Positions 538-57,890 of a stretch of 64,000 bases of DNA are shown piece after piece (positions within the stretch are counted from its first letter, which is position 1; the number at the start of each line of letters is the position of its first letter). Position numbers and translations under genes: made by a program. The DNA is from Stylophora pistillata. Its lineage: Eukaryota. Location of the stretch: positions 495,133-559,132 of the forward strand of contig NW_019217946.1 in the NCBI RefSeq assembly GCF_002571385.2. Direction: 5' to 3'. The notes beneath the pieces are model-generated. The model did not search any database. It was not told where the DNA came from and saw only the letters and a program-made list of their open reading frames with translations.

Positions 538-568
538 CCATCTCTGAAGACTCAGAGATGCTGTCAGT
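538..568 (-). CDS. Gene A0 (partial): first coding exon of a death-domain gene whose remainder lies left of the window
   Basis: Reads ACT GAC AGC ATC TCT GAG TCT TCA GAG ATG G|gtaagta, homologous to exon 1 of A1/A2/A3. Flanks (~70-1940) align with A3 flanks (~27440-30110). The first ATG of the paralogs is ACT here; the donor-adjacent ATG is kept. Confidence 0.6.
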
Positions 569-3043
569 CCAAGTGCTCTTGCCTAGTGATCGAAAGGCAT
601 TGATTGTCAGACAAAGCAAAACCAATTCAACCGGACAGCACGACGCGTATGATGGTCTCTACGTAAATAAGCGCTGAACAGGTTAATTGGCCGATTTTTA
701 TACCTGTCTGATGGGCTTATTGTCTTTATCTGGACTGAAATTGTGGAATTACAAAGTACGTAGTCCTCCCTGTATCGAAACTTCCGCGCAGTGTTGTGTA
801 CTATTTTCCGCTTATGTGCCGAATTTACTTTGGCAAACTTATCTTCTGTGCACGAACCCCTGCCACAAAATCTGCAAGTGACAAATGGAATGATAAACAC
901 CAGCTGTTTCTTCGCAAGGCGACCGCTAGTTGCAATGAAATGATCAAAGTGGAGCTGTGTGCTCAGACTTGTAAGGCAATTGAAGCTCATAAGAAAGTTA
1001 TTTCCTCACCACTTTGAAGCTATGACGTCAGTAGTGGACTGCCAACACTCCACAATTTTTAAAAGTAGCTTTGTCAAAGCCTTATCACAATGTGGAGCTC
1101 AGGAAAATTTTAATCAGCACAGAGTAAAGCTTAAGCTGTGTTCAGACTTGTAAATCCAAGGCATTTCATTTTGAAACTTAATGAAAGTAATTTCCTGGAT
1201 GCTTCGAAGCTATATATGACGTCAAATCAAGTTATAAAAATAGCTTTGGGAAATGCTGGTAGGGGTTTTCAGATATGTTAATTATGGGAAAAAAGATTAA
1301 AGTATTTATTAGACATGCTGCTCAAAGTCCCTCCAACGTCGTCACATTTAATTTTTGTCCCCTCTCCACTTTATTAATTAATTTACAATGATTAAAGTGA
1401 ATCTAGACTGATTGAGTATGTCAGTTTGTACAAAGAATGGTAATACAGTATCAGGTCTCGAGTGTTTTAAATATGTTTTGCTCTTCCTAATTTGACAAGT
1501 TTCCAGTTGTTAATCCACTATGTTTTTAAAGCTCAGTTGTTGCAGCATGCCTTTATTTGTGCGGGAAACTTTCCAGGCTCTCCAGTCAGTGACTAAGGCT
1601 CATAAGTAATAAATTTAACCATCCTTTTTTGTGAATAGTTCTCATTACGTACTTTAATTCTAAATAGAAATGAGATATTTATATGAACGTGTGTACGTTA
1701 AGGACAAAGAGCTTAATGGTTTATTCGTTTCACAAATTTCTGTACATGATGAAAAAAACAACAACGACAGTAAATTGTTGCAATCGAAAAAAAATTTTGT
1801 TCTACAGTTTTTTATTCGATAGGAAGATGTGGTCGACTTTGTCACAAATTTATGCAGGTCAAAACTAAGGTGAGATATAAAGATAATTGATCTAATTACC
1901 TCTGCGGAAACATGATCTCTGCATACAACTGACGTGGTATACCTGCAGCCTCCAAAACTGAACGAGATTGCAACATATGCATCACCACACTGTTACAACG
2001 CCAGCATCATCATCAAAACGTTTGTTCGTGCGTAAAACCTAAGTCATTAAATTCTTTTTTAAAGCTGACCAGCCAGCTAAAGCCGACGCTTAGCCTCCTC
2101 ACGTCCGTAGAAGAGAATTATGACACTTTTGACCGAGAATAACTATTAATCGTGGAATTCTTGAGCCTTTTTGCTGATACGAAGTCCAAGCGCCAAGAAC
2201 AAAGAGATCAATGTCATAATAAGGCTGACAGTACAACTAATGCTGACTCCCACGAATCACTTTTCTGTAGAGAGCAACGATTGGTCTGTTTGGTTTTTTG
2301 TTCTGATTACTATCCCGGACTGACTTTTTTTCGCGTACAATTTGGGATGAATAAGCCCTTGTAAATTTTTAAAAAGACTGACAAAATTGCATAAGCCCGT
2401 TGTATGATCCGCAAACTCGAAAGACAACAACACCGAGATGAATACTCTGACCCCTAATTTGGACTCGTCACGCAACACTCACTCTCCCACGTCGTTGTGT
2501 GACAAGACCAAACAACGACCTGCTCGTAAGCTATGATAATGCTTACTGCCTCTCCTTCGTCACAAGCAAAGTCTTAATTATTATTCTGGCCGTTAAAGGC
2601 CAGAAGCAGAAATTCCGTTTGGGTTTTCCTGTGCAGGAAAATGCGCCTTGTCCCCAATAAGTGCCCTCATTTGGGGTACCAAGAGTAAATTAGGGCCCGC
2701 CCGGCCCGGACGCTAAATGGAATCATAAGGGGACATGTTACTTAAAATAATTTTCAGTCATGTAACAATCGTTAGTTTATTTGTCTTAGCTCTTTTAATG
2801 CATTTACATCTGTATACTTTTTAAGTCTAAATTCTCGTGCGGGTTGGGCGTCTCGCATGGTCTCAGTGTCCCGTTCGCGTCAAAAAAGACAGGTCTTTAA
2901 CATTGATTTACAAGTCTTAAATGTCTCTCAGCTAACTACTACAATGTGACTTAGTTTGCTAATACTGACTTTATGCGTTTGGTAGATTTTCGACGACCAG
3001 TCACCTAGTGTTATGTGCAATTTAACTATCTTTCCTAAACCAT

Positions 3044-6000
3044 TCAAGAATTCCTGTGATTTATTGGCGAATAGGACATAAGGCGACACAGATTTTCTTC
3101 GCTTCCTTTTTTTCCGCTAAGGGTCTTCTTTGCAGTCTTTTTGATCTGTAAGAGAAGAATCATTTACTCCATGGCAAATAATGTAGAGGCACCATATGAT
3201 GGAACCAATTGACAGGACTGATATTGGAAAAGGAGGAATGGTGTTTAACTTATTCGGTTTCTCTTTTTTACTATTTCTCACTCGATAACTTTATGAAACC
3301 ATTTATTTTTTAGATATTCACTCGATAGAATTGCCAGTTCATTGACGTTTCTTAGTCCTCAAAAGCCAGCAAACAGACAGAAAAAATAGAAAGTTTTTGC
3401 CAGAATTTTCCCCAGTTGAGTTACAAAGTGAGCCAGAGTATATCGGATATAAATCGATCTGTCACAAGCAATTTCCCAAATTTTCCATAACCTCCCCTGA
3501 TAATTTGTTACGTTTGTACTCCCAGATACAGAGGGGTGTTGTGGGGGTAAAATGGTGAGACCGACTGGATCCTCTACCCGGACCATTAGAGAATTAATTT
3601 AACAGCTTACGGGACCTACTTTAGTAAAATACGTTCCAAACTTTTCATCCTCTCTCGTTGTTTCTGTCACTGGACTGGCAATCTGTTCACCTGGCCTGGC
3701 CTTAGGTTTGGACCTGGCGACTGGGTCTGTACATTGTCGTCTCAATTCCTATACAGCAGAGTAAAAAAATGTTCTGTTAAGAATGAATAAGGTCATGTCT
3801 TCAAGGCTGCCAAACGTCAAAAACGGCATGCAAACAAGGGTGGATCCGTAAATTTTTTGATAGGTAGGTCCAAAGTTTCATTCCGAAAATACAGTTTTTC
3901 CGCTAGAGCTTTAATGAGCAAGAGATATCTTAAGATAAGCGAAACTGAAATATTTAAACTTGATTGATAATACGCGATCCTATCGCTGGAAAAACTTTGA
4001 GAGGTGATTAAAATACCCAGAGGTCACGTGGGTAGCCCGCTGGATCCTCTTGACCGCTAATCTAAATCTGCTATTAGGTAAGTTCTCAAAGCGGCGAAGA
4101 CCAGAAAAGAAACAAAGGAACAAGCAGTTTTCAGATCAAACAAAGAGTGGATGGAAATAAATATGTAAAAGAATTTCATCTTAGGAGAGCTTTATTTCTC
4201 AACCTCAACGTTTTTTGGAGAGCAATTTGTTAACTTCATTCATAAGCTCAACATTTACCTTTTCCCAATGACATGTCTTTCCGGGGACTCCACATCCAAN
4301 NNNNNNNNNNNNNNNNNNNNNNNNNNNNNNNNNNNNNNNNNNNNNNNNNNNNNNNNNNNNNNNNNNNNNNNNNNNNNNNNNNNNNNNNNNNNNNNNNNNN
4401 NNNNNNNNNNNNNNNNNNNNNNNNNNNNNNNNNNNNNNNNNNNNNNNNNNNNNNNNNNNNNNNNNNNNNNNNNNNNNNNNNNNNNNNNNNNNNNNNNNNN
4501 NNNNNNNNNNNNNNNNNNNNNNNNNNCAATACAAATTTAAAAGCAAATTTTCATCCATACCGTTGAGAAAAGACCTCTCCACAGATTTTCCAACCTATTA
4601 ACCTGTCTCTGTCGGTTGGTCTGATAAAGTAGGAGTTTGCCAAACTCTTTTTTTTCTTCGTCGGTCATTTTATCTTGCGCCGTTGCCAAATCCTCAACTC
4701 GATGCACCGCGTCGTTGTGTTCCGCTCTGAGACCGTGATAAGCAAAGTCGTAAAACTCTCGTTTCACCTCCTCGCTGCATTTGCAAGTCTCTGCCACCAT
4801 GGAGAGGACTGCGCTGTAGAGCTCTTGTAGCCTTTTACTGATTGTTCCCAAGAGATCGAGCGTGACAGGAACTTTCAGTTTGTCTTCTTTTATTTCTGGC
4901 AATTCTAACACAGACGTTACATTTTTATAAAGGCGATCGTTGAGGTCTTTCAGCCTTTCGTTGATTTCACCCTCTTTGTCTGCTCTTTCTGGTTCAATGT
5001 AATTTGTGCTATCTTCTGATTCATCTTCCCGGTGTGAAATGTCAAAGTTCTGGGCTAAATTCTTCAAAAGTAAACAGAACGTTGCATGTCATCAGAAGGA
5101 AAAGTAGTGAGGTGAGTTACAATTTGCTCATAGCAGGATTAATGCGTAAATACTTAATTATAAGGCCGTGCGAGAACTCTGAAACAAGACGCACCGCTCG
5201 CCACACGCGTGACTATATTATTCTGTCGTTATCACCAGGAGTCTTTAGGTAATGACTAGTGGGTACTTATCTTTGTGCACGTGATTCGGGGATAAGCTAA
5301 AAAGCGCGCGATACTTGTGAATATGCTCTGGAAATTTCTTAAAAACTGAGGACATACCCAACGAAAAATTGCCAAAAGGCGAATCAAGAAAACATCTGCC
5401 TACCTGCTCTGGCCTGTCTCCTCTTATTCCAGCCAAGTCCTCTTTCGGCTTCGAACTTCTGGTCTTCCACTTTTGACACTGTTCTATAGTAGATGAAATC
5501 AAAAGAAACGTTTTCAGAATTAGGCTTTGCGAAAAACTTTTGGAGCATTGAGCAATTGTTTAAAGGTGTCAGGGAAATTCAGCCCAATTGTATTGGAAAT
5601 TATATATATGGCAAGGTATGTGTATGTCTAGAGAAGCAAGAACCAAAACAAAGCGTAAAATGTGGTTGCCAACCTCTTGAGAAGTGTCGTGAAGTTCTTG
5701 TTTCACTCTAGACAGCTCCTCTTCCAGTTGGTGAATTCTTGTACGTAATTTATTGCTCTGTTTCATCAAAAAGTACACAGGAAAATTTTATTTTAGGTTT
5801 TGTTTTTCCCACACGGAAAGAATTAGATAAAGTATCCATCGTTTGACAAGGGATAGTTTGTTACCATGCTTGTAGGAAACGCGAAAAGGGAAAAGGAATG
5901 AGGAAAAGGCCTTCACTGAATTCAGTTACCAACCTCTTCTAAACTGTCTTGAAGCTGTTTTGTCATACTCTGCTTTTCCTTTTCTAGCTCCTGCTTTCTC

Positions 6001-8278
6001 ATTTCCAGTTGATGACACTATTCATTTATGAATGTAAATCCGTTAAAAGTTACAAAGAGCTAATTCTGTTAAGAATAGGAAAAACTAAATTTTACTTCTC
6101 AAATCTCTCACCTCTTTTTTCAAATGTTTGCAGGTTTTCTCAATGACATCAATTCCATTCACCATCTGCAGTAAGATAACAAATCAAACTTTAAATTTTC
6201 TCAAGCTGATGACTCCTCTATACGCTAACCTCTTGCATAGTTTAAACTTTTTTCGGGAAGAACGTTTCAGTTCTTACAGAGGAAAAAACTCTGAAAATGC
6301 TCTTAGGAACATTTTAGCTCGTTTTGCTCCATATCCTTCAGCTTTTGACTTAAGGTCAAAGTCATCCATGCACACAGGAAAGATTCTTAGAGAGATATAA
6401 ACTAAGTCTTATCCTATTACACTTGTACTGCTAGAAGTTGATAATTTACCTGCTTTGAGTCGTTTGTTCCTGGTTCGACATCCTCTCCTGATAACAAGAG
6501 ATCTTAAAATAAAGTTGCATTGAGAATATTTTTCATTACCTACACTTTCATTTATAAGAAAAAAAACATATGTCATTCACTCTTTGTAAGACTTAAAAAC
6601 GGGTGAAGTGCCGCATAAAAAATAACTCAACAAAAGTTGACACAATAGTGGAAATCATCCCTAGTCCCTTACTAAAAGTACCATAGCTTAGAGTTATACA
6701 GAGAGCACGAGTTAATACGCGCTAAGAGGTTTTTGTTCAGCGTATTTCGTTCATTTGTCTTCGTTCGACTTAGAAATGAGTCTAGTATATCATTAAGAAT
6801 AAACTACCAATATTTAAAACGTGAAACGAGATCATCCCTAATCGCGAGTCAGCTTCCGAATACAAAGTAACATTTCGTACCCTGAAGTATTTCAGCCACT
6901 TTTTTAAGCCTTATTTTGGTTAGAGCATCAGCGAGCCTTTCAAGAGTAGCATCGTTTCCCTCCTGATTGATCCAGGCTACAATGACTGTGATGCAGCACT
7001 CATTGGTGACGCCCTTCTTGTCATTCTCAATCGTGCCAATAACAGCTTCTTGGAAATCTAGATGTCGTGCCATCTGTTTCCACTTGTCCCCAATCTTATC
7101 AGGCAATTGATGTTGGTGCATGACGTGGTCACTCATCAGTTTCCGGCTGCACTTAATGCTGGAACAACCTGCTAAAAGTACCGTAGCTTAGAGTAACACA
7201 GAGTACATGTTAATACGCGCTAACAGGTTTTGTTCAGCAAATTGGTTATAGTGAAAAAGTATGGAAGCGATAAAATTTTCCTGTATAAATAAAATCGCAC
7301 TCAAAGATGTTCTTGAGGATCAGTGATCGATGATCTGGTGCTAGTACGCCAGTAGGCTATTCACGTATTATTGACCGAGCGGGAGGTAAAGCTGGTCGGG
7401 CGCTAGCAAAGCTTTTGTTTGCGTCATCTTGGTAGACGAGGACTGAACCCTTTCAAACATCTGAATGGCCAGCACAAACTCTGACATGTTAATTTAGAAC
7501 AGTGTCCCCAATTACTTCTGCTGACCAAAATGATGTGAGGTATCTATTTTACTCGTTATTCAAATGAGCCGTGAATCATTGACATAATAAAGATGTAGGC
7601 TACGCTTTGTTTAACATCCTGATCCCCGAAAAAGTTTTTTTGTTTCTGCAGGATAGATAACACCACTTGTCTGCTAATTCTTAGGAAGAATTGAAAGATG
7701 ATACTGCTGGTAATACGTTTTAAAGCTACAATTGTCTTTGACGGACCAAATATGGGGGAGAAAGCAATTCGATGATACGATATGCCGCAAACGATAACGA
7801 TATACAGCGTAGAAAACTGTCAATTTTGCTGTCAGCGAACTGCATCTTAAGTAATTATATAGCTAAGAGACTCCGAATACGTGGAATGCCGGTTACGTAT
7901 ACTTTGAAGGGAATTGTCCCTTTGCCGTTCTTTATGCGGAAGTCAAGGGCAAAGGGGCAAAGTAGACTGAGCAACAACAAGGTTTTATACACGCACACGG
8001 AAACACTGAAGGAATATGATAAAATAGAAGATTGATCCGAAGAAAAAATATATTAACTGAACATTAAATACCTCACTCATATTTGATACATGCAATGCAC
8101 ATAATTAAAAAAAAAAATAACCAAAATTTTCAACTCTACTGCTACAATGTAATTTCGCTAAGAGAAATTATCTACCGGAAATTATTGCGGCAATATTGGA
8201 ACTTAGCTAAGATAGACCCTAACTAAATTCCGCTATGATGTACTTACCCATTTCTGAGGATTTAGAGATATTTTCCAT
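3044..8278 (-). CDS. Gene A1: death domain + coiled-coil + helical-bundle protein (~469 aa)
   Basis: Predicted exons: 8278-8248 (MENISKSSEM), 7168-6881 (death domain IGDKWKQMARHL...WINQEGNDATLERLADALTKIRLKKVAEIL), 6502-6450, 6165-6112, 6017-5934, 5757-5674, 5478-5404, 5061-4561 (helical domain), 3748-3611, 3145-3044 (TGA). All junctions are GT-AG with compatible phases and are conserved in A2/A3, except the A1-only 5478-5404 exon. One intron contains an N-gap. Confidence 0.8.
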
Positions 8279-9115: not shown

Positions 9116-9185
9116 GATGACTTGTATCAAGTCGTGCGTGACTCGCATCAACTCGCGGGTGACTTGTATCAATTCGTGGGTGACG
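9116..9185. repeat. ~21-bp x3 tandem repeat upstream of A1 (homologous copy at 19541-19616 upstream of A2)
   Basis: Repeated unit approximately tgacttgtatcaa(g/t)tcg(t/c)g(c/g)g, visible in the sequence. Confidence 0.75.
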
Positions 9186-12477: not shown

Positions 12478-15400
12478 TCAAGAATCCATAGGATTTATTG
12501 CTGAATAGGACGTAAGGTGGCACGAATTTTCTTCGTTTCCTCTTTTTCCGGAAAGGATCTTCTTCACAGTCTCTTTCACCTGTAACAGAAGGATCATTTA
12601 CTCTATGGAAAATAATGTAGAGGCACTATGGAACCAGTTGACGAGACTGATACTGGAAAAGAAGGAGCGGGTGTTGAGCTAATTCGGTTTTTTCCCTACT
12701 ATTTGTTACTCTATTACTAGATAGAATTGCCATTTCATTGACGTTTCTTAGGCCTCAGTCTTTCTCACTCGAAAACCAACAAACAGACAGACAAAGGGGA
12801 AAGTCTTTTGCCGGAATATTTCACAGTTTCTCAATTACAAAGTGAGTCAGAGTAAATCGGATATAAAACGATCTGTTACAGGTAATTTCCTAGAGACATT
12901 AGAGAATTTATTTAACATCTTACGGGACCTACATTAGTAAAATACGTCCCGAACTTTTTATCCTCTCTCATAGTTTCTGTTACTGGACAGGTGTTCTGTT
13001 CAGCTGGCATGGCCTGCTTGGGTTTGGTGCCTGAGTGTCTACATTGTCGTCTCAAGTTCTATGCAGCAGAGTGAAACAATATTATGTTAGGAAAGAATAA
13101 GCTAATGTCTTACGTAGCCATACGTCAAGAACTGCTTTCTAACGAGCCGTGCGGGATCCGTGAATGTTTGGTAGGTGAGTCCAAACTTGAATTTAGAAAG
13201 TCTGTTTACGAGCCAGTGACACACCAGTGGCCGGTGCTTAACTCCGGTTTACATAGCACGAAGCGACTAGGAGAATTTCTACTCCCCCCTAGATGGGATG
13301 CTAGTCCATCGCAGGGTTACCCCCCAGCATTAAATTTGCCGGTACCCATTTAAACACCTGGGTGAAGAGAGGCACGGTGAAAGTAAAGTGTCTTGCCGAA
13401 GAATACAACACAATGTCTCCGGCCAGGGCTCGAACCCAGACCACTCGACCCGGAGTCGAGCGCACCAACCTTGAGGCCACAGCGCCTCCACTTCATTTAG
13501 AAAACAGTTTTTTTTCTCTTCTCAAGACATGAGAAAGTGAAATATTTAAACTTTATTGGTAATATGCGATCCTATCGTTGAAAAAACTTTTTTTTTTGTT
13601 TCTTGTTTTTGAGTTATGAATTTGTTAGTTTGTTTCCGATTTGAGATTATTTTTGTACAATCTGCTCTTTGATCTTTTCCAAAACAAACATGAAGCTTTG
13701 GAATCAATAAAATTAAATACCGTTAGATTCTGTTGTTTATACCGAACAAGAGATTATAGTTTCTTGTACCAAACAAATCAAACAGATCCTTTCGTCATGA
13801 AACAAAGTCGTCCAGAACTTATGGTCTTGGGTTCGAATCTTTTAAAAGCACTTAGGATTTCTTCCTTTTTTTTTTCTAAAACGCTTCCAGATTTATCAAA
13901 AAAGATTCAAAAGCCCAGTTTTTCAATGAACAAGAAGCTCAAGGTAGCTTAGAATTATGCGCTGGAGGTTCCACCTTGTATAAAATAAGTACGCAATATG
14001 CACATAGTCGGAAATGCAGTTTGAAAACTGTGTCCAATACCCAATTAATCTCTGCTGTGTAGATCAAAAACTTTTGATCCAACATTAGGCAAACAGTATA
14101 TTGCTATTGTGTTATGTCAACTGTTAAAATAAATGCATGATAATTATCTAGGACCAAGGACTTAAAAACATCTGACAGTGATGTAACATAGAGAAAATCT
14201 GCAATTACAAGAGGTGCAACCCAATTTGCAAACCACTATAGCTTTCGCTGTAAGTCAATTGTTAGTTTATGTCAAGTTTGTGACCAAGTCAACCATAACA
14301 GGCAAAACTGTCAGCAACAGGAGTCTCTGTTTGGCTGATTGCGACAATGCAGAATACATATTGTTCCCAATGTTCAAAATTTGAACCACCTTAGCTGAAG
14401 AGGTTGTTGAATTTCTGAAGTTAAAAACAAGTGCTGATCGAAACTGACTTTGCCACAAATTGTGTGCCTGCATTTGTTATACCAATACCTCAACATTACA
14501 TTCACTGTAGGTTGCCGCAATAGTTTTAGTTAGATCAAGAATTCCTAGATGTGGATTTCTTTCGATGTCGGTGGAAAGCATAATATTGAAGTGATGGTGA
14601 AGCTTTTAAATACAGCAGGTTTTTAGTTGGCTCTAATTTGTGCTTTCTTATGATTTTTCTTGGGTTTTGTTTCCAACTGCTTAAAATAGCACTATGTTGT
14701 GCACAAGGTACGCAAATGTTTTAATGGCATCAATATCATAAACACTAGCGGGATCCTGGTTTGCCTCTACGTCATTTGCGAGTCGAATCAACTTAAGATT
14801 GCAATTTAGGCGATAAAAGTAGATCTGTGTAAGCTACAGGCGATTCATCCCCAACATTTCATATACGCGAACCAACCTTTTTAATACTAGCAAATATACC
14901 GCCTCTAAATAAAACAAAAAGATGATCGAGCACCAGAATTTCCCCTCGAAGGATCCTCGAAATTTCTTGACTACCAAATAAACGTGATGCATGTCAACGA
15001 CTTGCCTGTATTTTGTAAACTATTCCCCATTTACCCTCGTTGTACGCGCAGTTGGCGTTATTAGTAATTCTTAGAAATGCTCATATTTGCTTATATTAAT
15101 GAAGGTTCAGTTCTGCTCAGGTTAACCCCAGGTTAAGGTTAGGGTTAGAGTTAGGGTTGTTTCTCTAAGGCTATGTTGCTCTTTCCATGCATTTTCTCAA
15201 CAGCTTAGCGCATTTTTTGCCGCCACAGAATATTTCTAGTAATCCCCCCCCCCCGCTCCCTTTCCCCACCAAAATCGACAATCAACACAGTGCTTAATAT
15301 ATCCGTGTACAAATTTGCATACAAAAATGTGATACCAAAAATAAGAAGAAATGGAAGGCATTTTACCACTCATGCATTTAGTGCACATGAGTAATAACGA

Positions 15401-18400
15401 GTATCCTTACCCTTGAGAAATGACCTCTGCACAGACTTTCTACCCTATCGACCTTTCTCTGTCGGTTGTTTTGAAGTTTTTGGAGTTTGCCAAACTCCTC
15501 TTTCTCTTTGTCGTTCATTTTTTCTGATGCCGCTGCCAAATCTTCAACTCGATGCACCAGATCGTTGTGTTCCGCTCGGAGACCGTGATATGCAAAGTCG
15601 TAAAACTCTCCTTTCACCTCCTCATTGGTGCATTTGCAAGTATCAGCCGCGATGGAGAGAACAGAGTTATACAACTCTTGTAGACTTACACTGAGTCTTG
15701 TTAAAACAATCAGTTTGTCTCTTGTTTCTTGCTCTTCCAACACAGACGTAACTTTACTACAAAGCAGCCTGTTGAAGTGTTTCACCTTTGCCGCGTCGAT
15801 TTCAACCCCTGTATTAGCCCGATTTGGTGCGAGATTATTTCTGGTATCTTCTAAATCAACCTCTCGGAGTGAATTATCGAAGTTCTCGGCAAAATTCTGC
15901 AAAAGTACACCAAAACTTCCTTTTTATCACGCGAAAAAGAAGAAAAGTGAGTGAAAAGTATTAAATAGTGGTATTAATGTCGGTAAAAATGAATTTGTTA
16001 GGTCGTGCAAGAACTTTTAAGAAGACGCATTGCTCGCCACAGATAACTATATTTTTTCCTTAGTACCTGGAGCGTATTAATTAAGTAATGAGTATTCGCG
16101 AAGAGCATAAAATTAGAGCATAAAATGCGGTAACCAACCTCTTGAGATGTGTCTTGACGTTCCTGCTTTAGTATGGACAGTTCTTTTCTCAATTCTTGAA
16201 TTAATCCGTGTAATTCCCGGCTCTGTTTCATCAAACAGTACAAAGTAAAATGTTCATTTCTTTTTTGTTTCCATGAAACTCAAGTACCAGATAATTAAAG
16301 TATCCGTCGTTTGGTATTTCCTTTTCCTTCGGTTTCTTTTGCTTTTGTAGCTCCTGCTTTATCACTTCCAATTGGTGGCACTATTCATTTGTGTATACAA
16401 ATGCTTTTCGTGTTAGTAATGACCATTTCTGCCATTAAGGAATAACTAATTTTTTTCATAGAATTCCTCACCTCTCTTCTTAATTGATCGTAATTTTTCT
16501 CTATTTTATTCATTCTGTTCTCCATCTGAAATAAGATAACAAATAAAACTTTGAATATTTCACCAGCCGATGACTCCTCTATGGGCTTACCTCTTGCAGA
16601 GTTCATCTTTTTTTAGAAGGAGCCATGGTTTCAGCTCTTACAATGGACAAAATCGAAGGAATCCCTTTTACGAATGGTTAAGCCCCTTTTGCTAAAAGTC
16701 CTTTGGACCTAAATTCGTAGTCATCCATTCATCCAAGAAAGATTCTTAGAGAGATGTAAGACCTTATCCTATAACACTTGTGCTGCTGGAAGTTTGATTA
16801 TTTACCTGCTTTGAGTCGTTTGTTCCTGTTCCGTCATCCTCTTCTGATAACAAGAGACCTTGAAATAAAGTTGTATGGAGAGTATCTTACATTACCTACA
16901 CTTTTATTTTATAAGATAAAAGACATAAGACAGTCACCCTTCGTAAAACTTAGAAAAGGGTGAAGCACTGCATTAAAAATAACTTTCAAAAATTTAACAC
17001 GTTAGAGGGAATCTTCCCTAATCCCCTGCTAAAAGGTACCATAGGCTTAAGGTTACACAGAGAGCATGTCAATATGTGCTAAGAGGTTTTGTTTAGCGTA
17101 TTTCGTTCGTTTGTCTTCGTTCGACTTAGAAATGAGTCTAATATATTATTACGAATAAATTACTAATGTTTAGAACGTAAAACGAGATCATCCCTATTTA
17201 CAAGTCAACTAGCGAGTACTGGAGTAGCATTACGTACCCTGAAGTATTTCAGCCACTTTCTTAAGCCCTATACTGGTTAGAGCATTAGCGAGCCTTTCAA
17301 CAGTAGCGTCCTTTCCCTCCTGATTGATCCAGGCTACAATGACTGCGATGCAGCATTCCTTGGTGTCGCCCTTGTCATTCTTAGTCGTGCCAATAAAAGC
17401 TTCTTTGAAATTTAGCTGTCGCGCCAGGTTTTTCCACCTCTCCCCAACCTCATCAGGCAATTGATGTTCGTGCATAATGCGCTCGCTCATCAGTTTCCGG
17501 CTGCACTTAATGCTAGAACAATCTGCTAAAAGTACCATAGCTTAGAGTTACACAGAGTACATATTAATACGCGCTAACAGGTTTTGTTCAGCAAATTGGT
17601 TATGGTGAAAAAGTATGGAAGCGATAAAATTGTCCTTGTGTAACTAAAAATCGAATACAAAGATGTTTTTGATGATCGATGATCTGCTGCTAGTAAGCCA
17701 GTAGTTTATTCAGGTATTATTGACCGAGCGTGAGGTAAAGTTGGTCGGGCACTTGCAAAGCTTTTGTTTGCGTCATCTTGGTAGACGAAGACCGAATCCT
17801 TTCAGACATCTGATTGGCTAGTTTGATCGAAATTGAGACAGATATAAAAGGAAATAAGTCCACTTTTCGCAAACTCTGACAAGTTAGTTGAGAGCAGAGC
17901 CCCTAATCACTTCTGCTGAACAAAAAGAAGTGAGGTATCTAGTTTACTCGTTAGTCAGATGAACCGTAAAGACGTTGGCGACGCTTTGTTTAGCATCCTC
18001 CTCCCTGAAAAAGTTGTTTTTGTCGCTGCAGAGCAGCCTCAGAATAGATAACACCACTCGTCTGCCAATTCTTAAGCAGATGATACTGTTGGTAATGCGT
18101 TTTTAAGCTACAATTGTCTTTGACGGACCAAATATGGCGGCGGGAGCAATTTGAAGATACGATATGCCGCGCGCGTTAAAGATTCACAACGTAGAAAACT
18201 GTCACTTTTGTTGTCAATGGACTGCATGTTGATTAATTATATCGGCTAAGAGACCTTACATGATGAGCAGGAAGTTTTCTTTCCGAATATGTGCGGTATG
18301 CCGGTTAAGTAGCCTTTGAAGGGAATTTTCTCTTTGCCGTTTTTTTTTATGCGGAAGTCAAGGGCAAGGGAGCAAAGTAGACTGAGCAACAACAAGGTTT

Positions 18401-34606: not shown

Positions 34607-34608
<2 letters not shown>

Positions 34609-42313: not shown

Positions 42314-43897
42314 AAACCCTTGAAAGAAATAAACGGTAAAAATTTCAAGTCAATCAGTTAAGTACCATATGAGATATGTTCTCTAGAATGCGCAAAAAGC
42401 ATTTTCTGTGAAAAGAGGTATCCGAGTTAAAAAGCTGAATAGACGATTGTCTCCCCAAAGTTTTATGGCCACAAAGTGGTTGAAACATTTGCAATGTTTA
42501 TTTCAGTCACCTAGAAGGCTCCAGCTTCATAAGTTGTGCCCTCAGCCTCCCGTAGGGCTTCTTCTCTGCTTGTTCGCATCATTTGAAATCCTTGCCTCAT
42601 TTCTTCTTTGGCTTCAGAGGCTCAAGTATGGTATGAACTTGTTTATAATAGGCAGGTAGTGATAAACATGGCATGTTCATAATGCTACAAAATGATACCA
42701 AACCTTCATAACCACCTCCTGTCTCCAAGAAATGATAGACAGCACTCCTGTTGATATCAAAAGATTGTCCTCTCTTGGTTATCCTGGCTGATGTTTCTAG
42801 TGGTGTAGCTTCAAGGCAGAAGCTACATTCCAAAGAGGGGTCTGCCAGAAGCCCATTTCTCCCAGAAAAATTTTCTTCGACAGTTAAACAACCTAGAATA
42901 TGATGATGGTGTAGAATAAGGTTAAATCATGTGTATTTTTACATTTGCAAACAATAATTTTATTCAGCACACACCACAACAAACTTGAGTTACAACTGTA
43001 ATTTATGATGATGATTCTAAAGAGTACAAAGGATAACAATCAAGGGAAGACTATATTCAAGAGAAACAAAATAATCGTAAAAATAATAAATAAAAAACTT
43101 TCAATATGTGCTACCTGATATGAACAGTGATGAATAAAGAAATGGTTAGGAGCAGAAAAATGAACTCTCGTAATATTTTCTCACCTTCTTTGCACACATG
43201 TGCTTCAGACAATGCGGCAGATAATTTCTTCAGATCAACAAGCCTGTATCCCTCTCCCTGAAAATTTTTCTCATCATCAACACTCTCCGATGAAATGTCC
43301 GAAGCGTCTTCTCGCCTCATTTTCTGTCTCGAAGCACAAATTGTTTGATCACACTCCGCATCAGTTGGTGTCTGATCACACAAGGAACTCTGAGTAGGAT
43401 CGCCGATTTCTCCATCCACATGTGGCGTTTCTTTCGCTATTTTCCCGTATCTCTGAGCTCCAGTAAAAGCTTTCCCTTTCCTTTTTTTTCTGTATACAGT
43501 ATTCTTTTTACCTCCGGGCATTTCACACAAAACCTTCACTGATATATTAACCCTCAAACTTGCTCTCTCTTGATGCCATCAATCATGCTTCTTTTGATCC
43601 CATAAAGCTTCAGAGAAATGTACTGTTGTGTAAATGATCATATAACGTCCTCTTATAATTCCTTCACAAATTATAGGAATTGGATTTGGAGTACAACGGA
43701 AAAATGCTACTTTGCGTTGGCATGCTAACAATAATTTTTTTAACTAGTCCACAGAAAACGTTTCGCAAACACTAGAACACATCAATTAGGATCGTAAAAC
43801 ACTTGTCATGACTTTCCTCAATGCCTAAAGCTTCAGATTTTTGAAAAAAACAAAAATTGCATTTTGGAGTCGAAATTTAGGTTAAGTCCCGCCTTAA
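42314..43897 (-). mobile_element. Truncated Kolobok / 'Mutator-like' DNA transposon with the 5' part of a transposase gene
   Basis: Exon 43521-43185 (MPGGKKNTVYRKKRKGK...HVCKE) splices to 42892 onward (GCLTVEENFSGRNGL..ECSFC..SFDINRSAVYHFLETGGGYEGLVSFCSIMNMPC..YYKQ) and is then truncated. The terminus is gtcccgcc-TTAA at 43897. Absent from the B2 unit. Confidence 0.7.
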
Positions 43898-45848: not shown

Positions 45849-45889
<41 letters not shown>

Positions 45890-51595: not shown

Positions 51596-52868
51596 GGTGC
51601 ATAAAGCATGCTTATCTGTTTCATGTAAACAATATTCAATGCTTAATAGCCATTTTATAAATCTCTTGCTCCTCACCTATAAAAAAAAAATTGAATTCTC
51701 TCACGTATTCAGAACATTCTCGTTCCTAGAGCCCATCAATTTTCTCGGCAGGCAGTGAGCAAAATCAACAATCGATAAAGAAAGTGACGTCAAAGACATG
51801 ATATGAGTATGAGCTATAATTGTTTGTAGAGCGGCAGCTAACTTCAATCTATATGTAGTAATTCGCAAAGATCGCACTTCGAAAGATTTTTCGCCCGTGT
51901 CTCGCTCGATTTTATTATCAAACTTTAACAAGACGTTTTTGTTTTAAAAATCAAATTTATGTTGGTTATTGAGATGTTTTGATATAAGATGTAATCGAAA
52001 TCAGGCGAGAACACGAACAACATTTTTTAAAGTCAAATTCATACGCACACATACTTACATGCACTTTATTTCAGTTATATATAGTTAATATGGCTAATTA
52101 GAGAAAGTTGTGATGGAATTTTAAAAAAATATAATTGATAATCAAGAAAGACAAGAAATAACAATCCCCATTTTAGTATACAAGAGTTAATTCTATATTG
52201 ATGTATCGTGAATCCTCACACACTCCCATAATCTAAAGAATATATTGAAAGCTGATCAGCTAAATAGTTTGTCGTGTGCTTACAAATTTTTGTTCATGTT
52301 CAACTTGGCGATTACAATTATGCCGAAAAGGCTAATTCACCCGGCTGTACAACAAGGCGAAAAAGGAATTGCTTCTGTCAGTTATTGAGAGTCTTATTTT
52401 TTTAACATTATATTTCTCAAATAAATATAGGGTCTACTGAATCTTCTCGTAATCGAGTGTTAATAAAATGGGTGGTAAATAAAATTAAAGTTGTTCTTGT
52501 GCCCCTTTCAATATCTTTCGCAACAGGGCCTCCTCAAAAAGTGGTTATTCAAATCAATTTCAGTTTTTATTTTTTTTATTGTAAAAATTACCAGTCTATG
52601 AGTTCTTTTGTGTTATCTCTTCCTTCCGATTCCTTGGTTTAGTGTTCTTTATCGCTGGAGGGTTTTGAGATTGAGAGAAGGATTCAAGGTTTTTTGTCTC
52701 CGGATCGCAGCCTCAACAAGGGGTTCTTGAACCACGAGGAAAAGAAAGTAAAGAAAAATACAGTTTTGTTAATTTTGTTAGCATTCTTGCTGTTTTCTGA
52801 TGGGGATATATTTATCGTACTGCAACCAAGAAAATATGAGGAACATAACTATATGGATTACCACAAGG

Positions 52869-54401
52869 CACTCTGATGAAACCGCCCTATAATTTGAAAA
52901 CTCGAAAAATTCAGTTATATCATTATAATATGAATTTTTAGCGATTAATAAAGCCTTTTCAATAACAATTTCAGTTGAAAGCCAATTCTGAGGCGAGAAA
53001 TTACGATTTGAAAACCGTTCCGCCTTTAATTTTCGTAATCACGGCCAACTTATCTTCGGTCAGCGGTCACTCCCATTCTGGCGTAGATTACTCGACACAC
53101 TTTTATATTTATACGAAAACCTTGTGAAATTTAGTGAAATAGTCTTAGTCTTAGTGTTATAAAAAGAAATATATACGATCAAAATAGCCACGAGCACGGC
53201 GTGTCAAATGAGTAATCTACGTCACGGTCCCTCCCATTATGACGTGGATTAATAATAATAATAATAATNNNNNNNNNNNNNNNNNNNNNNNNNNNNNNNN
53301 NNNNNNNNNNNNNNNNNNNNNNNNNNNNNNNNNNNNNNNNNNNNNNNNNNNNNNNNNNNNNNNNNNNNNNNNNNNNNNNNNNNNNNNNNNNNNNNNNNNN
53401 NNNNNNNNNNNNNNNNNNNNNNNNNNNNNNNNNNNNNNNNNNNNNNNNNNNNNNNNNNNNNNNNNNNNNNNNNNNNNNNNNNNNNNNNNNNNNNNNNNNN
53501 NNNNNNNNNNNNNNNNNNNNNNNNNNNNNNNNNNNNNNNNNNNNNNNNNNNNNNNNNNNNNNNNNNNNNNNNNNNNNNNNNNNNNNNNNNNNNNNNNNNN
53601 NNNNNNNNNNNNNNNNNNNNNNNNNNNNNNNNNNNNNNNNNNNNNNNNNNNNNNNNNNNNNNNNNNNNNNNNNNNNNNNNNNNNNNNNNNNNNNNNNNNN
53701 NNNNNNNNNNNNNNNNNNNNNNNNNNNNNNNNNNNNNNNNNNNNNNNNNNNNNNNNNNNNNNNNNNNNNNNNNNNNNNNNNNNNNNNNNNNNNNNNNNNN
53801 NNNNNNNNNNNNNNNNNNNNNNNNNNNNNNNNNNNNNNNNNNNNNNNNNNNNNNNNNNNNNNNNNNNNNNNNNNNNNNNNNNNNNNNNNNNNNNNNNNNN
53901 NNNNNNNNNNNNNNNNNNNNNNNNNNNNNNNNNNNNNNNNNNNNNNNNNNNNNNNNNNNNNNNNNNNNNNNNNNNNNNNNNNNNNNNNNNNNNNNNNNNN
54001 NNNNNNNNNNNNNNNNNNNNNNNNNNNNNNNNNNNNNNNNNNNNNNNNNNNNNNNNNNNNNNNNNNNNNNTATACGGAAACCTCGGAAGTTTAGTGAAAT
54101 AGTCATAGTCTTAGTGTTATAAAAAGCAATATATACGATCAAAATACTGTTTTTGAAAATTAGCCACGAGCACGGCACTTCAAATGAGTAATCTCCAAAC
54201 TCACGCCAGTCTTCTTGAGTCTGGCAAGTGATTACGAAAATTAATGGCGGAGCGATTTTCAAATCGTAATTTCTCGCACTAGAAAAGGCTTTCAACTAAA
54301 GTTATTATTGAAAAGGCTTTATTAATGGCTAAAAATTCATATTATAATGAAATAACTGCATTTTTCGGGTTTTCAAATTATAGGGCGGTTTCATCAGAGT
54401 G
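52869..54401. mobile_element. Long-TIR (~170 bp) MITE/foldback spanning an assembly gap
   Basis: cactctgatgaaaccgccctataatttgaaaa... / ...ttttcaaattatagggcggtttcatcagagtg. Absent at the homologous site in the B2 unit (~45314). Confidence 0.75.
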
Positions 54402-54489
54402 TTCCTTTAAGAATAGTATTATCCTAACACAAAAGCTAAGCTTTATATGAATTCCGTACGTACGGTTGCCTACCAGAGTTGAATGTTTA

Positions 54490-56474
54490 GCATTTCATTT
54501 TGATGTCTTCGATCAAATCAATTCAATAATCGTGTTCATGATAAAAGCAATTTTCTTCCCGTTATGGCCAAGTTTACGGTGTTGGGTCTTAGAAAACTTC
54601 TCTTCGAGTTTCTGTTCCTGGGAAGACAGTCAAAGACCTTCAATTTGTTTTTCTAACGTTCTTAGCTTGATGGTAGTATTTTAATAACGACTACATCATA
54701 CCTTTGCTCCAGTCTCTTTTGGAGGGTCACATTCTGAATAACGTCTGGGACTCTGCAAAACAAAAATATAATTAAATCTCAACGTAAACATTCAGCTTCT
54801 GTCCTGAAAACAGGCGACAGAAGCAATATGACAACTTTGACAAGATTCGAACAAAGATATATTGAGCGCATTATCATGGCTCATATTTGCTATGATGGCG
54901 GCTTACGCAGTTACGTAACATCTGCAGTTTGACTCAGTCCAGTGATCTGTGTTTTGATAATCTCAGTTACCTCTCCATAATTCCCTTACCTTTCCTCCAT
55001 ATTCTGGAAGAGATTTTGAGATTCCTTCTGGCAAAGATTTCTGGTGAGAGAGCTTTAGAAAGAAAAGAATACAAAACACCAGAAAGGGGAGAAGATTTAT
55101 CAGGATCATCAATGATAAGATACTGCGGGCTAGTTTGAATCTGATGAAACAAACCTGAAGCAGAATGCGATAAAGAACTTAATAAGCAACAATTATGAGC
55201 CACTAAGGCCCTTGCCGGTTGGTTGTACAAAGTTCCATCTCTTGCCAAGTCCATTGGACTTCCAAACCTGAGTCTCTCTTCACTCTAAGTCAGTGCTTTT
55301 CGTGCGCGTTGATTGGCTTGTTCGTAAGTGACTAGCAATTAAGTTCTATTCAACGACATCTCGGCGAATAATTGTTAATTTATCACAAACATGTGACTTG
55401 GAGTATCGATCACGTTTATCTGTTTTATGTAAACAATGAAAATTGCATATTAGCTTCTTCGACCCTTTTCCTTAGAGAACAAAAATTAAATAGATTGTTT
55501 TAAAACATGTTCTTGTTAACCATTTCATTTTGATGTCTTAGATGAATAATCAATTCAATAATCGTGTTCATGATAAAAGCAGTTTTCATAAGGTCGTATT
55601 AGCAGCAAGTATGATAAATATTGTAAGAAATAGACAACTTTTTTGAGGGACATGTTTCGGCATGCTTATGCCATTATTGATTGAAGATGGCATAAGCATG
55701 CCGACGGAAACATATCTCTCAAAAAAGTTGTCTATTTCTTACAAAAGCAATTTTCTTCCCACGTATGGCCAAGTTTACGCTGTTGGGCCTTAGAAAAGTT
55801 CTGTTTGAGTTTCTCTTTCTAGGAAGACAGCCAAAAATCTTTAATTTTTTTTCTAACGTTCTTAGCTTGATGGTGGTATTTTAATAACGACTACATCATA
55901 CCTTTGCTCCAGTCTCTTTTGGAAGGTCACATTCTGAATAACGTCTAGATATGGGACTCTACAAAACAAAAATATAGTTAAATCTCAACACAGACATTTA
56001 GTTTCTGTCCTGACAACAGGCGACAGGAGCAATATGACAACTTTGACCAGATTCGAACAAAGATATATTGAATGCATTATAATGGCTCATATTTTCCGTG
56101 ATGGTGGCATACCCAGATACGTAACATCTACAGTTTGACACAGTCCTGTGATCTGTGTTTTGATAATCTCAGTTACCTCTCCATAATTCCCTTACCTTTC
56201 TTCCATATCCTGGAAGATATTTTGACATGCGTTCTTGCAAAGATTTCTGCCGAGAGGGCTTTAGAAAGAAAAGAACACAAAGTGTGACAATAACATAACA
56301 CCAGAAAGGGGAGAAGATTTATCAAGATCATCGATGATAAGATTCTGCCTACCACTTTGAATTTGATGATACAAACCTGAAGCAGAATGCGACTAGGAAC
56401 TTAATAAGCAATAAGTATGAGCCACTAAGGCCCTTGCCGGTTGGTTGTACGAAGTTTCATCTCTTACCAAGTCC
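54490..56474. repeat. ~0.8-0.95-kb tandem duplication containing the B3 small 3' exon
   Basis: 54490-55253 aligns with 55521-56474. Confidence 0.85.
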
Positions 56475-57890
56475 AAACCTGGGTCTATCTCCCCGCTCTA
56501 AACCAACTGTTTCCTGATTTTCCGCCACTGAGTTTTTCAAAATTGAGTTACAAATTGTACTTAGTATTAAGTGATTAACGCGACAAAATGTTAGTCCATT
56601 GAAATTACCGGCCTCTCTTTATTACCCAGCCCTCTCTCCATTTTCCATTCAGCATTCAGCAGTCCTGACAGAAGCTTTTCAACTTCCTTGAATTGCACCT
56701 CATGTTGCGTTTTCCATTTTTGTAATTCTTCAGTTCGATCCGCGTGCTTCTCGTCTGAGAGTTGGTTATGAGTACAAGTCGATTCAATTTTCGAGAAAAG
56801 TGCTTTTTCTTCTTGCCGGAGTTCCTTAGCATAGTCCAAAAGCTGTTGAATACAATTTACGTCATCTTCATTTTGTTGCGCAACTTCGGCAGTCATTTTG
56901 ATAAGAGCTTCAAACATCTTCTGAAAAAAGTTGCGATGTTCTTCACATGTTTGTAGCAATTCTTCCACGCTTTCATCGTTTGGTGGACCCACCTCCTCAT
57001 TAAATGAACTGCTTGTCGGCTCTATGTTTTCCTTGGAGGCATCTTGAGTCCTATTTGCTGTACCAACATTTCCACAAGCCGCCAGTAGCCCTTTCTTCAT
57101 TTGAAACCTCAGGTCCTGAAGTTCTGATGATATATATCGCTTTAGGCTTTCCTGTCTCGCCACAACAGTTTCTAAGAATCTTTTGCCTATATTTGTCTGT
57201 CAAATAAAATAAAATTGGGTGAACACTTAATAAAAAAGATAGCATCATTTTCGAGGACGTACACCGAAACACAGGGTGAATTTTCTTCCAAACATCCTAA
57301 TTGGATGGATTAAAGGGATAAGTGAAAAAATTACCTCTTCCAGATTCAAAAGTTTGTCACTGCTGTTGAATGGTTTTACCGTGTATTTATTTCCCTGCGC
57401 ATCTACGCACACCATATGCTAAAGAAATGACAAAAAGTTGAGTGTTAACAAACCTGGACTAATTTGATAAAAATGTTCGTTAAACAAAGATAAGTTTCAT
57501 ATTTGATTAGTAAAGAGTAAGCGATAGTGGAGAATGGTGAAAATCCAAGAGAATGGATGAAATTCGTATTCTGCAAATCCGTGTGAGAGACATCTCTGTT
57601 CTATACTCGGTCTAGGTTTCATCCCGTTCAGTTCACGAGTCGTAATCACTTGAAAAGTGAAAGTTATTAGCTTTGGAGGGGTCACGGGCAGACATACTAA
57701 TCATCAGTTTTGGAGGAAACGGATTATAACTACGTTGTATCAAAGAATGCATGTGGCTATTGTAAAAATTGTATCTTTCAGTAGTTATGGTAGAACACGT
57801 GTTGTTAACTACTAACCTTATCAAGCCCTGCACCCAACTCATGTATAACTGTCAAACTGATAACATGGCCCTTGGGTACATCATCCACTC
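54702..57890 (-). CDS. Gene B3 (partial, 3' part): linker and helical-bundle exons; death-domain exon not in the window
   Basis: Exons: 57890-57817 (GVDDVPKGHVISLTVIHELGAGLDK), 57418-57335 (HMVCVDAQGNKYTVKPF...), 57196-56609 (open, highly similar to B2), and a duplicated small exon at 55958-55902 and 54752-54702. Upstream sequence runs into transposons from ~58.4 kb. Confidence 0.7.
55621..55744. mobile_element. Inverted (palindromic) Penelope-type terminus with degenerate hammerhead motifs
   Basis: Near-perfect palindrome containing ttgaagatggcataagcatgccgacgGAAAcatatc. It lies in an insertion flanked by an aaaagca(g/a)ttttc duplication and present in only one of the two tandem copies. Confidence 0.65.

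What the first reader, a model, noticed from the sequence alone, without database searches (positions are those of the whole stretch)
538..57890. Tandem array of at least 7 death-domain genes with an unassigned DD - linker - helical-bundle architecture: candidate lineage-specific immune/cell-death adaptor system
Seen: seven same-strand paralogous units at a ~10 kb period. Five visible exons encode a canonical death domain (W..LA..L / W....G..AT...L..AL..I....AE.L), each on its own phase-1/phase-1 exon, followed by a linker and a conserved helical domain. No NACHT, TIR, kinase, caspase, ZU5, ankyrin or transmembrane region is visible, so these are not recognisable FADD, MyD88, RIPK, IRAK, PIDD, TNFR or NLR genes. 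Established: death domains nucleate homotypic signalling assemblies, and DD genes are expanded in cnidarians. Inference: a birth-and-death cluster of soluble adaptors/effectors with diversified DD surfaces, including intact, broken and transposon-interrupted members.
Basis: partly seen in the sequence, partly recalled or inferred. Interest (0 to 1): 0.85.

Follow-up and report, generated by a model that had tools for sequence, protein, structure and literature searches.

The report
Coral death-domain adaptor gene array
This stretch of the coral Stylophora pistillata genome holds a real, transcribed tandem array of stony-coral-only genes that join a death domain to a coiled coil and a four-helix bundle with no known relative; they are probably cell-death or immune signalling adaptors, but no function has been tested.

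Summary
On the minus strand, at a period of about 10 kb, the window carries six units. At 538 it also carries the first-exon donor of a seventh unit, whose body lies left of the window.

Five exons are Pfam Death domains (E 1e-14 to 1e-16), and the three I checked are phase 1/1. Six large exons encode a helical domain. AlphaFold2 models it as a confident four-helix bundle (pLDDT 90) with no Pfam or PDB relative.

PolyA RNA contigs from four runs show every GT..AG junction of unit 3.

The units fall into two subtypes:
- Type A (units 1-3): death domain, heptad helix built from short exons, four-helix bundle, then a basic disordered tail.
- Type B (units 4-6): an acidic N-terminal exon, death domain, two small exons, a divergent bundle, then repeated tail exons.

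The family was found only in stony corals, in both major clades. Every member is annotated as uncharacterised or carries a spurious name. No paper names these genes.

Unit 5 has an in-frame TAA. Unit 6's death-domain exon lies about 9 kb upstream, past an intact Harbinger-type transposase ORF.

An adaptor or scaffold role, analogous to CARD-coiled-coil proteins, is inferred and untested. This is a new variant of the known death-domain expansions in corals.

The parts
538..600 (-). Unit 0: 3' end of its first exon (an ATG, then a G before a GT donor; exon ends at 538). The rest of this type A gene lies left of the window.
   Evidence: The local alignment to unit 3 exon 1 and its flanks places the donor at 538. 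The block 391-1940 is 77% identical to 28502-30110. The gene's DD and 4HB exons lie at C163:493223 and C163:489001.
3047..8278 (-). Unit 1, type A gene (NCBI LOC111330974). Exons: exon 1 about 8248-8278; DD 6881-7171; short coiled-coil exons about 6447-6500, 6112-6165, 5934-6017, 5671-5766 and 5404-5499; 4HB 4561-5063; a partial exon at 4259-4294 cut by the gap 4300-4526; tail exons 3620-3748 and 3047-3145.
   Evidence: P0003 is its NCBI product and P0079 a full-length transcript product. Both were mapped by tblastn. Splice sites were read, Pfam Death is, and exon boundaries were projected.
12481..18711 (-). Unit 2, type A gene. Exons: exon 1 about 18661-18711; DD 17238-17525; 4HB 15411-15896; tail exons 12933-13058 and 12481-12579. 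It is the longest branch in the tree, and no product matching it exactly turned up in my searches.
   Evidence: dN/dS against unit 1 is 0.96 for the DD and 0.61 for the 4HB.
22857..28679 (-). Unit 3, type A gene (NCBI LOC111330979, product P0084). RNA-validated exons: 28649-28679 (coding part of exon 1), 26724-27017 (DD), 26531-26583, 25687-25740, 25456-25578, 24507-24986 (4HB), 24065-24124, 23534-23662, and 22857-22961 plus the 3' UTR.
   Evidence: Seven of the eight junctions appear in all four polyA RNA runs with CT..AC ends, which is GT..AG on the minus strand. The exon 1 junction appears in one run (27017 to 28649), and an alternative acceptor at 27415 in two. Every exon is open in the expected phase. 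P0084 maps at 99-100% identity.
35849..41227 (-). Unit 4, type B gene. Parts: acidic N-terminal exon within 40883-41227; DD 37813-38088 (phase 1/1); small exons 37275-37366 and 37013-37135; large linker plus helical exon from 36493 down within the open frame 35849-36514. Its tail exons were not located.
   Evidence: Pfam Death at 8e-14. Splice sites and phases were read. The upstream exon is homologous to the one seen spliced to a DD in the RNA contig L001.
45008..50773 (-). Unit 5, type B gene, broken in this assembly. Parts: N-terminal exon ending at 50465; DD 47607-47883; gap 46803-46813 where the two small exons should be; helical exon 46094-46678 with an in-frame TAA at 46476-46478; tail exons 45614-45657 and 45008-45149. 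One tail exon present in unit 6 is missing.
   Evidence: The RNA contig L001 and its product P0098 carry a Lys codon at the position of the TAA.
52589..57878 (-). Unit 6, type B gene, the part inside the window. Small exons 57814-57878 and 57329-57420; helical exon 56609-57198; tail exons 56196-56259, 55902-55960, 54703-54754 and 52589-52728. Its DD exon lies outside the window at C163:562177-562451, equivalent to window 67045-67319.
   Evidence: L001 mapping. The DD exon and its flanks were found in L002 at 83% identity to unit 5's DD region.
60180..61463 (+). Intact 428-aa Harbinger/PIF-type transposase ORF (DDE_Tnp_4 plus HTH_Tnp_4). It sits inside the roughly 9-kb intron between unit 6's DD exon and its first small exon.
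   Evidence: Pfam 8.2e-52 and 1.4e-11. The position relative to the DD exon follows.
31057..32814 (+). Reverse-transcriptase ORF (586 aa) of a retroelement, lying between unit 3 and unit 4.
   Evidence: Pfam RVT_1 at 1.1e-27.
42600..42926 (-). Remnant of a Mutator-like transposase, lying between unit 4 and unit 5.
   Evidence: Pfam PF20700 at 1.3e-10.

Best explanation
What it is. The window is part of an array of about 115 kb on one Stylophora pistillata contig. The array holds nine genes: five of type A and four of type B. They belong to a gene family found only in stony corals (Scleractinia).

The protein. Each gene encodes a soluble protein with, in order:
- a short N-terminus, or in type B an acidic extension of about 100 residues;
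- a death domain most similar to those of RIPK1 and FADD;
- a helix of about 65 residues with heptad periodicity, built from short duplicable exons (type B has two small unassigned exons here instead);
- an acidic linker;
- a four-helix bundle of about 145 residues with no detectable relative;
- a basic, Ser/Thr/Pro-rich disordered tail with conserved short motifs.

Shown here: the domain content, the splicing and transcription, the restriction to stony corals, the tandem duplication, and the decay of some copies.

Inferred mechanism. As in other death-fold adaptors, the death domain probably joins helical death-domain assemblies with other death-domain proteins, such as receptors or FADD- and RIPK-like proteins. 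The coiled coil and the bundle would hold several death domains together or dock an effector, as the coiled coil does in CARD9 and CARMA proteins. The tail, with its basic Arg-x-x-Ser/Thr-type motifs, would regulate this. The output would be cell-death or innate-immune signalling.
For: - Death domain: Pfam Death at E 1e-14 to 1e-16 in five exons. The best PDB sequence matches are the death domains of RIPK1 (E 2e-7 and 1.6e-6), FADD, ankyrin and THOC1.
- Bundle: AlphaFold2 on the helical exon gives pLDDT 89.8 and pTM 0.79, with four helices of about 30 residues.
- Whole protein: the model of P0084 shows the death domain at 17-105, one long helix at 117-181, the bundle at 194-337 and a disordered tail at 339-437.
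- Helix and charge: heptad periodicity is present, and there is no transmembrane segment. The structured core is acidic (coiled coil -9, bundle -7) and the tail is basic (+8).
- Transcription: four polyA RNA runs carry the GT..AG joints of unit 3. A spliced type B transcript contig exists.
- Distribution: only 72 cluster representatives among 1.8 billion proteins. All named members come from Stylophora, Pocillopora, Oculina, Desmophyllum, Porites, Montipora or Acropora.
- Conservation: invariant bundle residues and conserved tail motifs hold across both coral clades.
- Selection: older paralogue pairs have dN/dS of 0.15-0.38.
- Types A and B: the two bundles are homologous. The hhalign score is 28.6 (P 7e-4), against shuffled controls of 11.9 +/- 2.1 and 13.7 +/- 2.5 with a maximum of 20.7.
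Against: - No functional, expression-response or interaction data exist for any member.
- The self-association test gave no verdict.
- The bundle resembles only generic helical bundles (Z 11.6 or less), so the fold gives no functional clue.
- Death domains also occur in proteins outside death and immune signalling, such as ankyrin and THOC1, and these are among the better sequence matches.
- Young copies evolve almost neutrally, and at least one copy is broken.
Confidence: 0.6

Rival explanations
1. Executioner model. The four-helix bundle is itself a membrane-acting effector, in the manner of the MLKL or fungal HeLo/SesA bundles. The death domain would only recruit it to an activated death-domain platform. 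The basic, Cys-containing tail would help it bind membranes.
For: - One family member (P0053) gives a weak sub-threshold hit to Pfam SesA, at E 0.0029 and 18 bits against a cut-off of 26.
- The tail is basic and carries conserved Cys residues near the C-terminus.
- The nearest Atlas feature clusters are unnamed fungal proteins (a lead only).
Against: - No MLKL, HeLo, Bcl-2 or pore-former stands out in Foldseek or VIA-align. The top 50 hold only generic bundles.
- The SesA hit occurs in 1 of 49 members.
- The bundle is strongly acidic, at -7, and has no hydrophobic helix.
Confidence: 0.1
2. Non-immune scaffold. The proteins are structural or trafficking coiled-coil scaffolds, and the death domain serves only as a general protein-binding module, as in ankyrin or THOC1. 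The tandem expansion would reflect dosage or neutral duplication.
For: - The ankyrin and THOC1 death domains are among the best PDB matches.
- The bundle superposes best on syntaxin/Sso2 and on STAT coiled-coil domains (Z about 11).
- Automated names such as 'myosin heavy chain-like' reflect the coiled coil.
Against: - Those fold matches are below the noise level stated for helical bundles.
- Rapid lineage-specific tandem expansion with decaying copies and nearby transposons is the pattern described for conflict and immune gene families in sessile marine animals (PMC8195603). It is not the pattern of housekeeping scaffolds.
Confidence: 0.2
3. Decoy or regulator model. The proteins cap or sequester death-domain assemblies. 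They would act as negative regulators of apoptosis or immune signalling, not as transmitters of it.
For: - They carry no enzymatic or further recruitment domain.
- There are many diverged paralogues with differing death domains.
- Transcripts are present in colonies from three studies.
Against: The conserved bundle and tail motifs, under purifying selection across both coral clades, suggest that the C-terminal half does something specific. A simple decoy would not need it.
Confidence: 0.1

Closest known systems
CARD-coiled-coil adaptors (CARD9, CARD10/11/14; PMC5978004)
   Same: A soluble protein with an N-terminal death-fold domain followed directly by a coiled coil and no enzymatic domain. 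The expected logic is oligomerisation-driven nucleation of a death-fold filament.
   Different: The death-fold domain is a DD (PF00531), not a CARD. The coiled coil is short (about 65 residues) and is followed by a four-helix bundle without known relatives and a basic disordered tail. There is no sequence homology outside the death fold. The family is confined to stony corals and is tandemly expanded.
RIPK1 and FADD death domains
   Same: These are the best sequence matches of both DD subtypes among solved structures (E 2e-7 to 1e-5).
   Different: No kinase, RHIM or DED is present. The DD is N-terminal here and C-terminal in RIPK1 and FADD. UniProt's automatic name 'RIPK1' for one relative (P0049) rests on the DD alone.
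Lineage-specific expansions of Death-like and TRADD-N proteins in sessile marine invertebrates (Kaur et al. 2021, PMC8195603)
   Same: Tandem, lineage-specific expansion of death-fold proteins in a coral, with transposable elements close by and fast turnover of copies.
   Different: There is no TRADD-N domain. The constant partner module is a bundle that was not found described in the library I searched.
Syntaxin/Sso2 closed four-helix bundle and STAT coiled-coil domain
   Same: A long antiparallel four-helix bundle of similar size (VIA-align Z 11.6 and 11.2).
   Different: Sequence identity is 9%, and the Z scores are below the value of about 13 that the tool gives as background for helical bundles. 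Foldseek E is 0.15 or higher. This is a shared shape only.

Membership tests
Death domain superfamily (Pfam PF00531) | Significant match to the Death profile above the curated cut-off | tested here: met
   Five exons score 52-61 bits against a cut-off of 22.6. Full-length products score 48-59 bits.
Death domain superfamily (Pfam PF00531) | Six-helix bundle fold | tested here: met
   The AlphaFold2 model of P0084 shows six helices in residues 20-104, with block pLDDT of 89-94.
CARD-CC family (CARD9/10/11/14) | N-terminal CARD domain | tested here: not met
   Pfam finds Death, not CARD, in every member scanned.
CARD-CC family (CARD9/10/11/14) | Coiled coil directly after the death-fold domain | tested here: met
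   There is a single long helix at residues 117-181 with pLDDT about 90 and heptad periodicity. Whether it actually forms a coiled coil was not tested successfully.
FADD | DED plus DD | tested here: not met
   No DED was found by Pfam on the full-length products.
RIPK1 / IRAK / Pelle kinases | Protein kinase domain joined to a DD | tested here: not met
   No kinase domain was found in the products or in the window's exons.
MyD88 | DD plus TIR | tested here: not met
   There is no TIR hit.
MLKL / HeLo / SesA executioner bundles | Sequence or fold match of the bundle to these families | tested here: not met
   A SesA hit occurs in only 1 of 49 members and is below the cut-off. None appears among the top 50 structural matches.
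MLKL / HeLo / SesA executioner bundles | Membrane permeabilisation after oligomerisation | not testable with these tools
   This needs liposome or cell assays.

The most novel reading that the evidence does not exclude
The conserved four-helix bundle and its basic tail are a new effector or hub module that arose in the ancestor of stony corals. The death-domain/coiled-coil/bundle proteins would then form a coral-specific branch of death-domain signalling, possibly working as type A/type B pairs, since the two types sit together in three separate clusters. That branch would decide cell death or symbiont tolerance during infection or heat stress.
Probability: 0.15. Interest if true: 0.75.

Novelty: new variant of a known kind. 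Interest (0 to 1): 0.45.

Why it matters
Corals carry very large death-domain repertoires. This genome has at least 150 DD exons. Almost none of their signalling wiring is known, although apoptosis and innate immunity are central to bleaching and coral disease.

This family is a compact and tractable case. It has one recognisable recruitment domain and one conserved module without known relatives. It is confined to stony corals, present in both major clades, expressed in colonies and tandemly amplified.

Working out what the bundle and tail do would give the first handle on a coral-specific death-domain pathway. It would also add a new domain family to the databases.

If the genes turn out to be ordinary scaffolds, the finding is just one more lineage-specific death-domain expansion.

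Tried and rejected
- Self-association of the coiled coil plus bundle (P0084 residues 112-340, two copies) gave no verdict. The score was 0.40 and one control scored 0.60. It is evidence for neither side.
- Foldseek against the PDB found nothing at E 0.001 or better.
- VIA-align found only generic helical bundles, with Z 11.6 or less.
- A profile search of PDB sequences gave only chance-level hits, the best being papillomavirus E6 at E 0.009.
- The ESM Atlas returned unnamed clusters for the bundle and for type B's small exons.
- Pfam on all 49 alignment members found no family covering the bundle. Sub-threshold hits were DEATH_SH3BP4 in 3 members and SesA in 1.
- The first hhalign comparison of types A and B (98.7%) was invalid, because alignment A1 contained two type B rows. 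It was redone without them.
- Literature searches for the gene and protein identifiers, and for a death-domain plus coiled-coil family in corals, found nothing. The held supplements of the S. pistillata cell atlas had no matching terms.
- The look-up of encoding contigs on P0084 returned nothing.
- An amphioxus protein (P0204) scored 171 bits against the full-length profile. It contains several death domains and no bundle, so it is not a member.
- I considered a Zn site formed by the conserved Cys-x-Cys and His residues. I dropped it because those residues lie far apart along helix 3 of the model, and I could not measure distances.
- I considered a RHIM in type B's small exons and saw no I/V-Q-I/V-G core.
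Full-length analyses used database proteins returned by the searches.
Full report
**Source and layout.** The window is Stylophora pistillata contig C163:495133-559132. An all-against-all comparison of open frames and a self-BLAST show repeated blocks at a period of about 10 kb, with the coding frames on the minus strand. Five open frames match Pfam Death (PF00531) at E 8e-14 to 1.4e-16: 6852-7187, 17233-17541, 26719-27033, 37790-38113 and 47603-47902. Six larger open frames, with no Pfam family, follow them downstream: 4540-5088, 15381-15923, 24483-25016, 35849-36514, 46077-46679 and 56594-57199. The first three and the last three form two groups, here called type A and type B. Identity is 55-79% within a group and at most about 25% between groups.

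**Transcription and exon chain.** Contigs from four polyA RNA runs, from three studies, were laid on 22700-28699. All four show the same seven joints with CT..AC ends, which is GT..AG on the minus strand. One run adds the exon 1 joint (27017 to 28649), and two runs show an alternative acceptor at 27415.
- After the two '+1' shifts that the tool itself flagged, unit 3 has these exons: 28649-28679 (start codon), 26724-27017 (DD, phase 1/1), 26531-26583, 25687-25740, 25456-25578, 24507-24986 (helical domain), 24065-24124, 23534-23662 and 22857-22961.
- All exons are open in phase.
- They match the NCBI protein P0084 (LOC111330979) at 99-100%.
- Unit 1 is LOC111330974. Its NCBI product is P0003, and P0079 is a full-length transcript product from another colony.
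Full-length work used database proteins.

**The seventh unit and the ends of the array.**
That gene's DD exon (C163:493223) and helical exon (C163:489001) lie left of the window.
- Unit 6's DD exon is not in the window. It lies at C163:562177-562451, about 9 kb upstream of unit 6's small exons. Its flanks are 83% identical to unit 5's DD region.
- The intervening intron holds a 366-N gap and an intact 428-aa Harbinger-type transposase ORF at 60180-61463.
- The contig as a whole carries nine DD exons, five type A helical exons and four type B helical exons over about 115 kb.

**Gaps.**
- 4300-4526 removes the acceptor and the 5' part of the small exon after unit 1's helical exon. Only 4259-4294 is visible, and the NCBI model therefore reads on into the intron.
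- 46803-46813 stands where unit 6 has about 800 nt, including both small exons. Unit 5 is not continuous there.
- 53269-54070 and 58917-59282 lie in introns of unit 6.
- 34528-34555 lies in a simple repeat.
- None was filled.

**Type B structure.** A spliced Logan RNA contig (L001, 1411 nt) shows the order of type B exons: an upstream acidic exon, the DD exon, two small exons, the large helical exon, then four short tail exons encoding repeated Arg-Arg-Tyr-Ser-type motifs. Splice sites and phases in unit 4 agree with this order.

Relative to the reference, this contig is a hybrid:
- Its 5' half is 97.6-99.3% identical to unit 5.
- Its tail is 98-100% identical to unit 6.
- It has a Lys codon where unit 5 has TAA (46476-46478).
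- It has a one-base difference in an A-run that breaks its own frame.

Assembly chimera, unequal crossing-over and reference mis-assembly cannot be told apart here.

**The protein.**
- AlphaFold2 on the type A helical exon, with 49 aligned sequences, gives pLDDT 89.8 and pTM 0.79. It shows four helices of about 30 residues.
- The full-length model of P0084 shows the six-helix DD at 17-105, one long helix at 117-181, an acidic disordered linker, the bundle at 194-337 and a disordered tail at 339-437.
- The long helix has heptad periodicity, and there is no transmembrane segment.
- The structured core is acidic and the tail is basic and rich in Ser, Thr and Pro.
- Across 24 full-length homologues the bundle keeps invariant residues, including a Cys-x-Cys turn and a His. 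The tail keeps two short motifs: a basic-x-x-Thr-Asp-Pro-Gly site and a basic, Cys-containing C-terminus.
- The bundle has no relative by Pfam, PDB sequence profile or Foldseek. VIA-align gives Z 11.6 or less to syntaxin/Sso2, STAT and spectrin-like bundles, below the tool's stated background for helical bundles.

**Are types A and B related?** My first profile comparison was contaminated by type B rows and is void. Redone without them, hhalign gives P about 7e-4 to 9e-4 over 97-139 colinear columns. The score of 28.6 compares with these controls:
- a reversed type B profile: 11.2;
- column-shuffled controls: 11.9 +/- 2.1;
- block-shuffled controls: 13.7 +/- 2.5, with a maximum of 20.7.

Together with the shared gene plan, this supports distant homology. 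The fold of the type B domain was not modelled.

**Distribution and evolution.**
- A search of 1.84 billion cluster representatives found 72 relatives of the bundle.
- Every named one comes from a stony coral: Stylophora, Pocillopora, Oculina, Desmophyllum, Porites, Montipora or Acropora. Both major coral clades are covered.
- All are annotated as uncharacterised or carry spurious names.
- The genome holds 21 type A-like and 7 type B helical exons. Types A and B sit together on three contigs: C163, C13 and C3.
- A maximum-likelihood tree groups the window's type A units with two neighbours on C163, one copy on C180 and a Pocillopora verrucosa protein (support 95/95). Unit 3 is sister to the off-window unit 0 (99/99). 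Acroporid copies form their own expansions.
- Nei-Gojobori dN/dS is 0.96 (DD) and 0.61 (bundle) for units 1-2 and 0.76 for units 5-6, against 0.15-0.38 for older pairs.
- This fits birth-and-death turnover with long-term constraint. It does not specifically show diversifying selection on DD surfaces.

**Function.** Nothing here tests function.
- The DDs are closest to those of RIPK1, FADD, ankyrin and THOC1.
- By established knowledge of death-fold adaptors, the most likely role is a scaffold that brings DDs together to seed or join DD assemblies.
- The closest architectural analogue is the CARD-coiled-coil family (PMC5978004). Membership fails, because the domain is a DD and not a CARD.
- The pattern of a lineage-specific, transposon-rich tandem expansion in a sessile marine animal matches what Kaur et al. 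describe for Death-like and TRADD-N proteins (PMC8195603).
- No paper names these genes.

**Verdict.** This is a new variant of a known kind and is of moderate interest.

Noticed in passing
L001 (Logan RNA contig) against window 45008-57878: The one type B transcript contig has a unit 5 front (97.6-99.3% identical) and a unit 6 tail (98-100% identical). It carries a Lys codon where unit 5 has TAA. It could be an assembly chimera, an unequal-crossover allele in another colony, or a mis-assembly of the reference.
   Followed up: partly
window 6881-7171 vs 17238-17525, and 4561-5061 vs 15411-15896: Units 1 and 2 differ by dS 0.13 in the DD exon but by dS 0.38 in the helical exon. This suggests gene conversion over the DD-proximal block 5973-9192 / 16336-19623.
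   Followed up: partly
P0192 (S. pistillata LOC111331832, contig C180): This 979-aa model carries the coiled coil, the bundle and the tail but no death domain. By eye, its N-terminal half looks like IPT/TIG plus ankyrin. Either the C-terminal module is portable or the gene model is a fusion artefact.
   Followed up: no
P0091 (Desmophyllum) and P0007 (Logan): These proteins combine a type B-like death domain with a type A bundle, so DD subtypes and bundle subtypes are shuffled among corals.
   Followed up: no
window 7160-7171 with exon 1 at 8248-8278; also P0083: The last codon of exon 1 plus the start of the DD exon reads Met-Gly-Cys-Ser-Ser, and the Pocillopora verrucosa protein starts exactly there. 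This looks like an N-myristoylation/palmitoylation motif. It is not conserved in unit 3 or in other paralogues.
   Followed up: no
window 391-1940 and 28502-30110: A 1.6-kb block, 77% identical between the two places, covers exon 1 and the upstream region of units 0 and 3. It includes a CCAAT box and a TTACGTA element. It is probably a shared promoter.
   Followed up: no
window 60180-61463 (+): An uninterrupted 428-aa Harbinger/PIF-type transposase ORF (DDE_Tnp_4 at E 8e-52, plus an HTH domain). The element may still be active.
   Followed up: no
window 31057-32814 (+) and 42600-42926 (-): A 586-aa reverse-transcriptase ORF and a Mutator-like transposase remnant lie between gene units.
   Followed up: no
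G000 contigs C13 (1153-1180 kb) and C3 (2312-2387 kb): Type A-like and type B helical exons, together with DD exons, also sit side by side in two other clusters of the genome.
   Followed up: partly
window 4540-4560 (P0003 C-terminus): The NCBI model for unit 1 ends with residues read from the intron, because the next exon is cut by the gap at 4300-4526. The annotated C-terminus is an artefact.
   Followed up: yes
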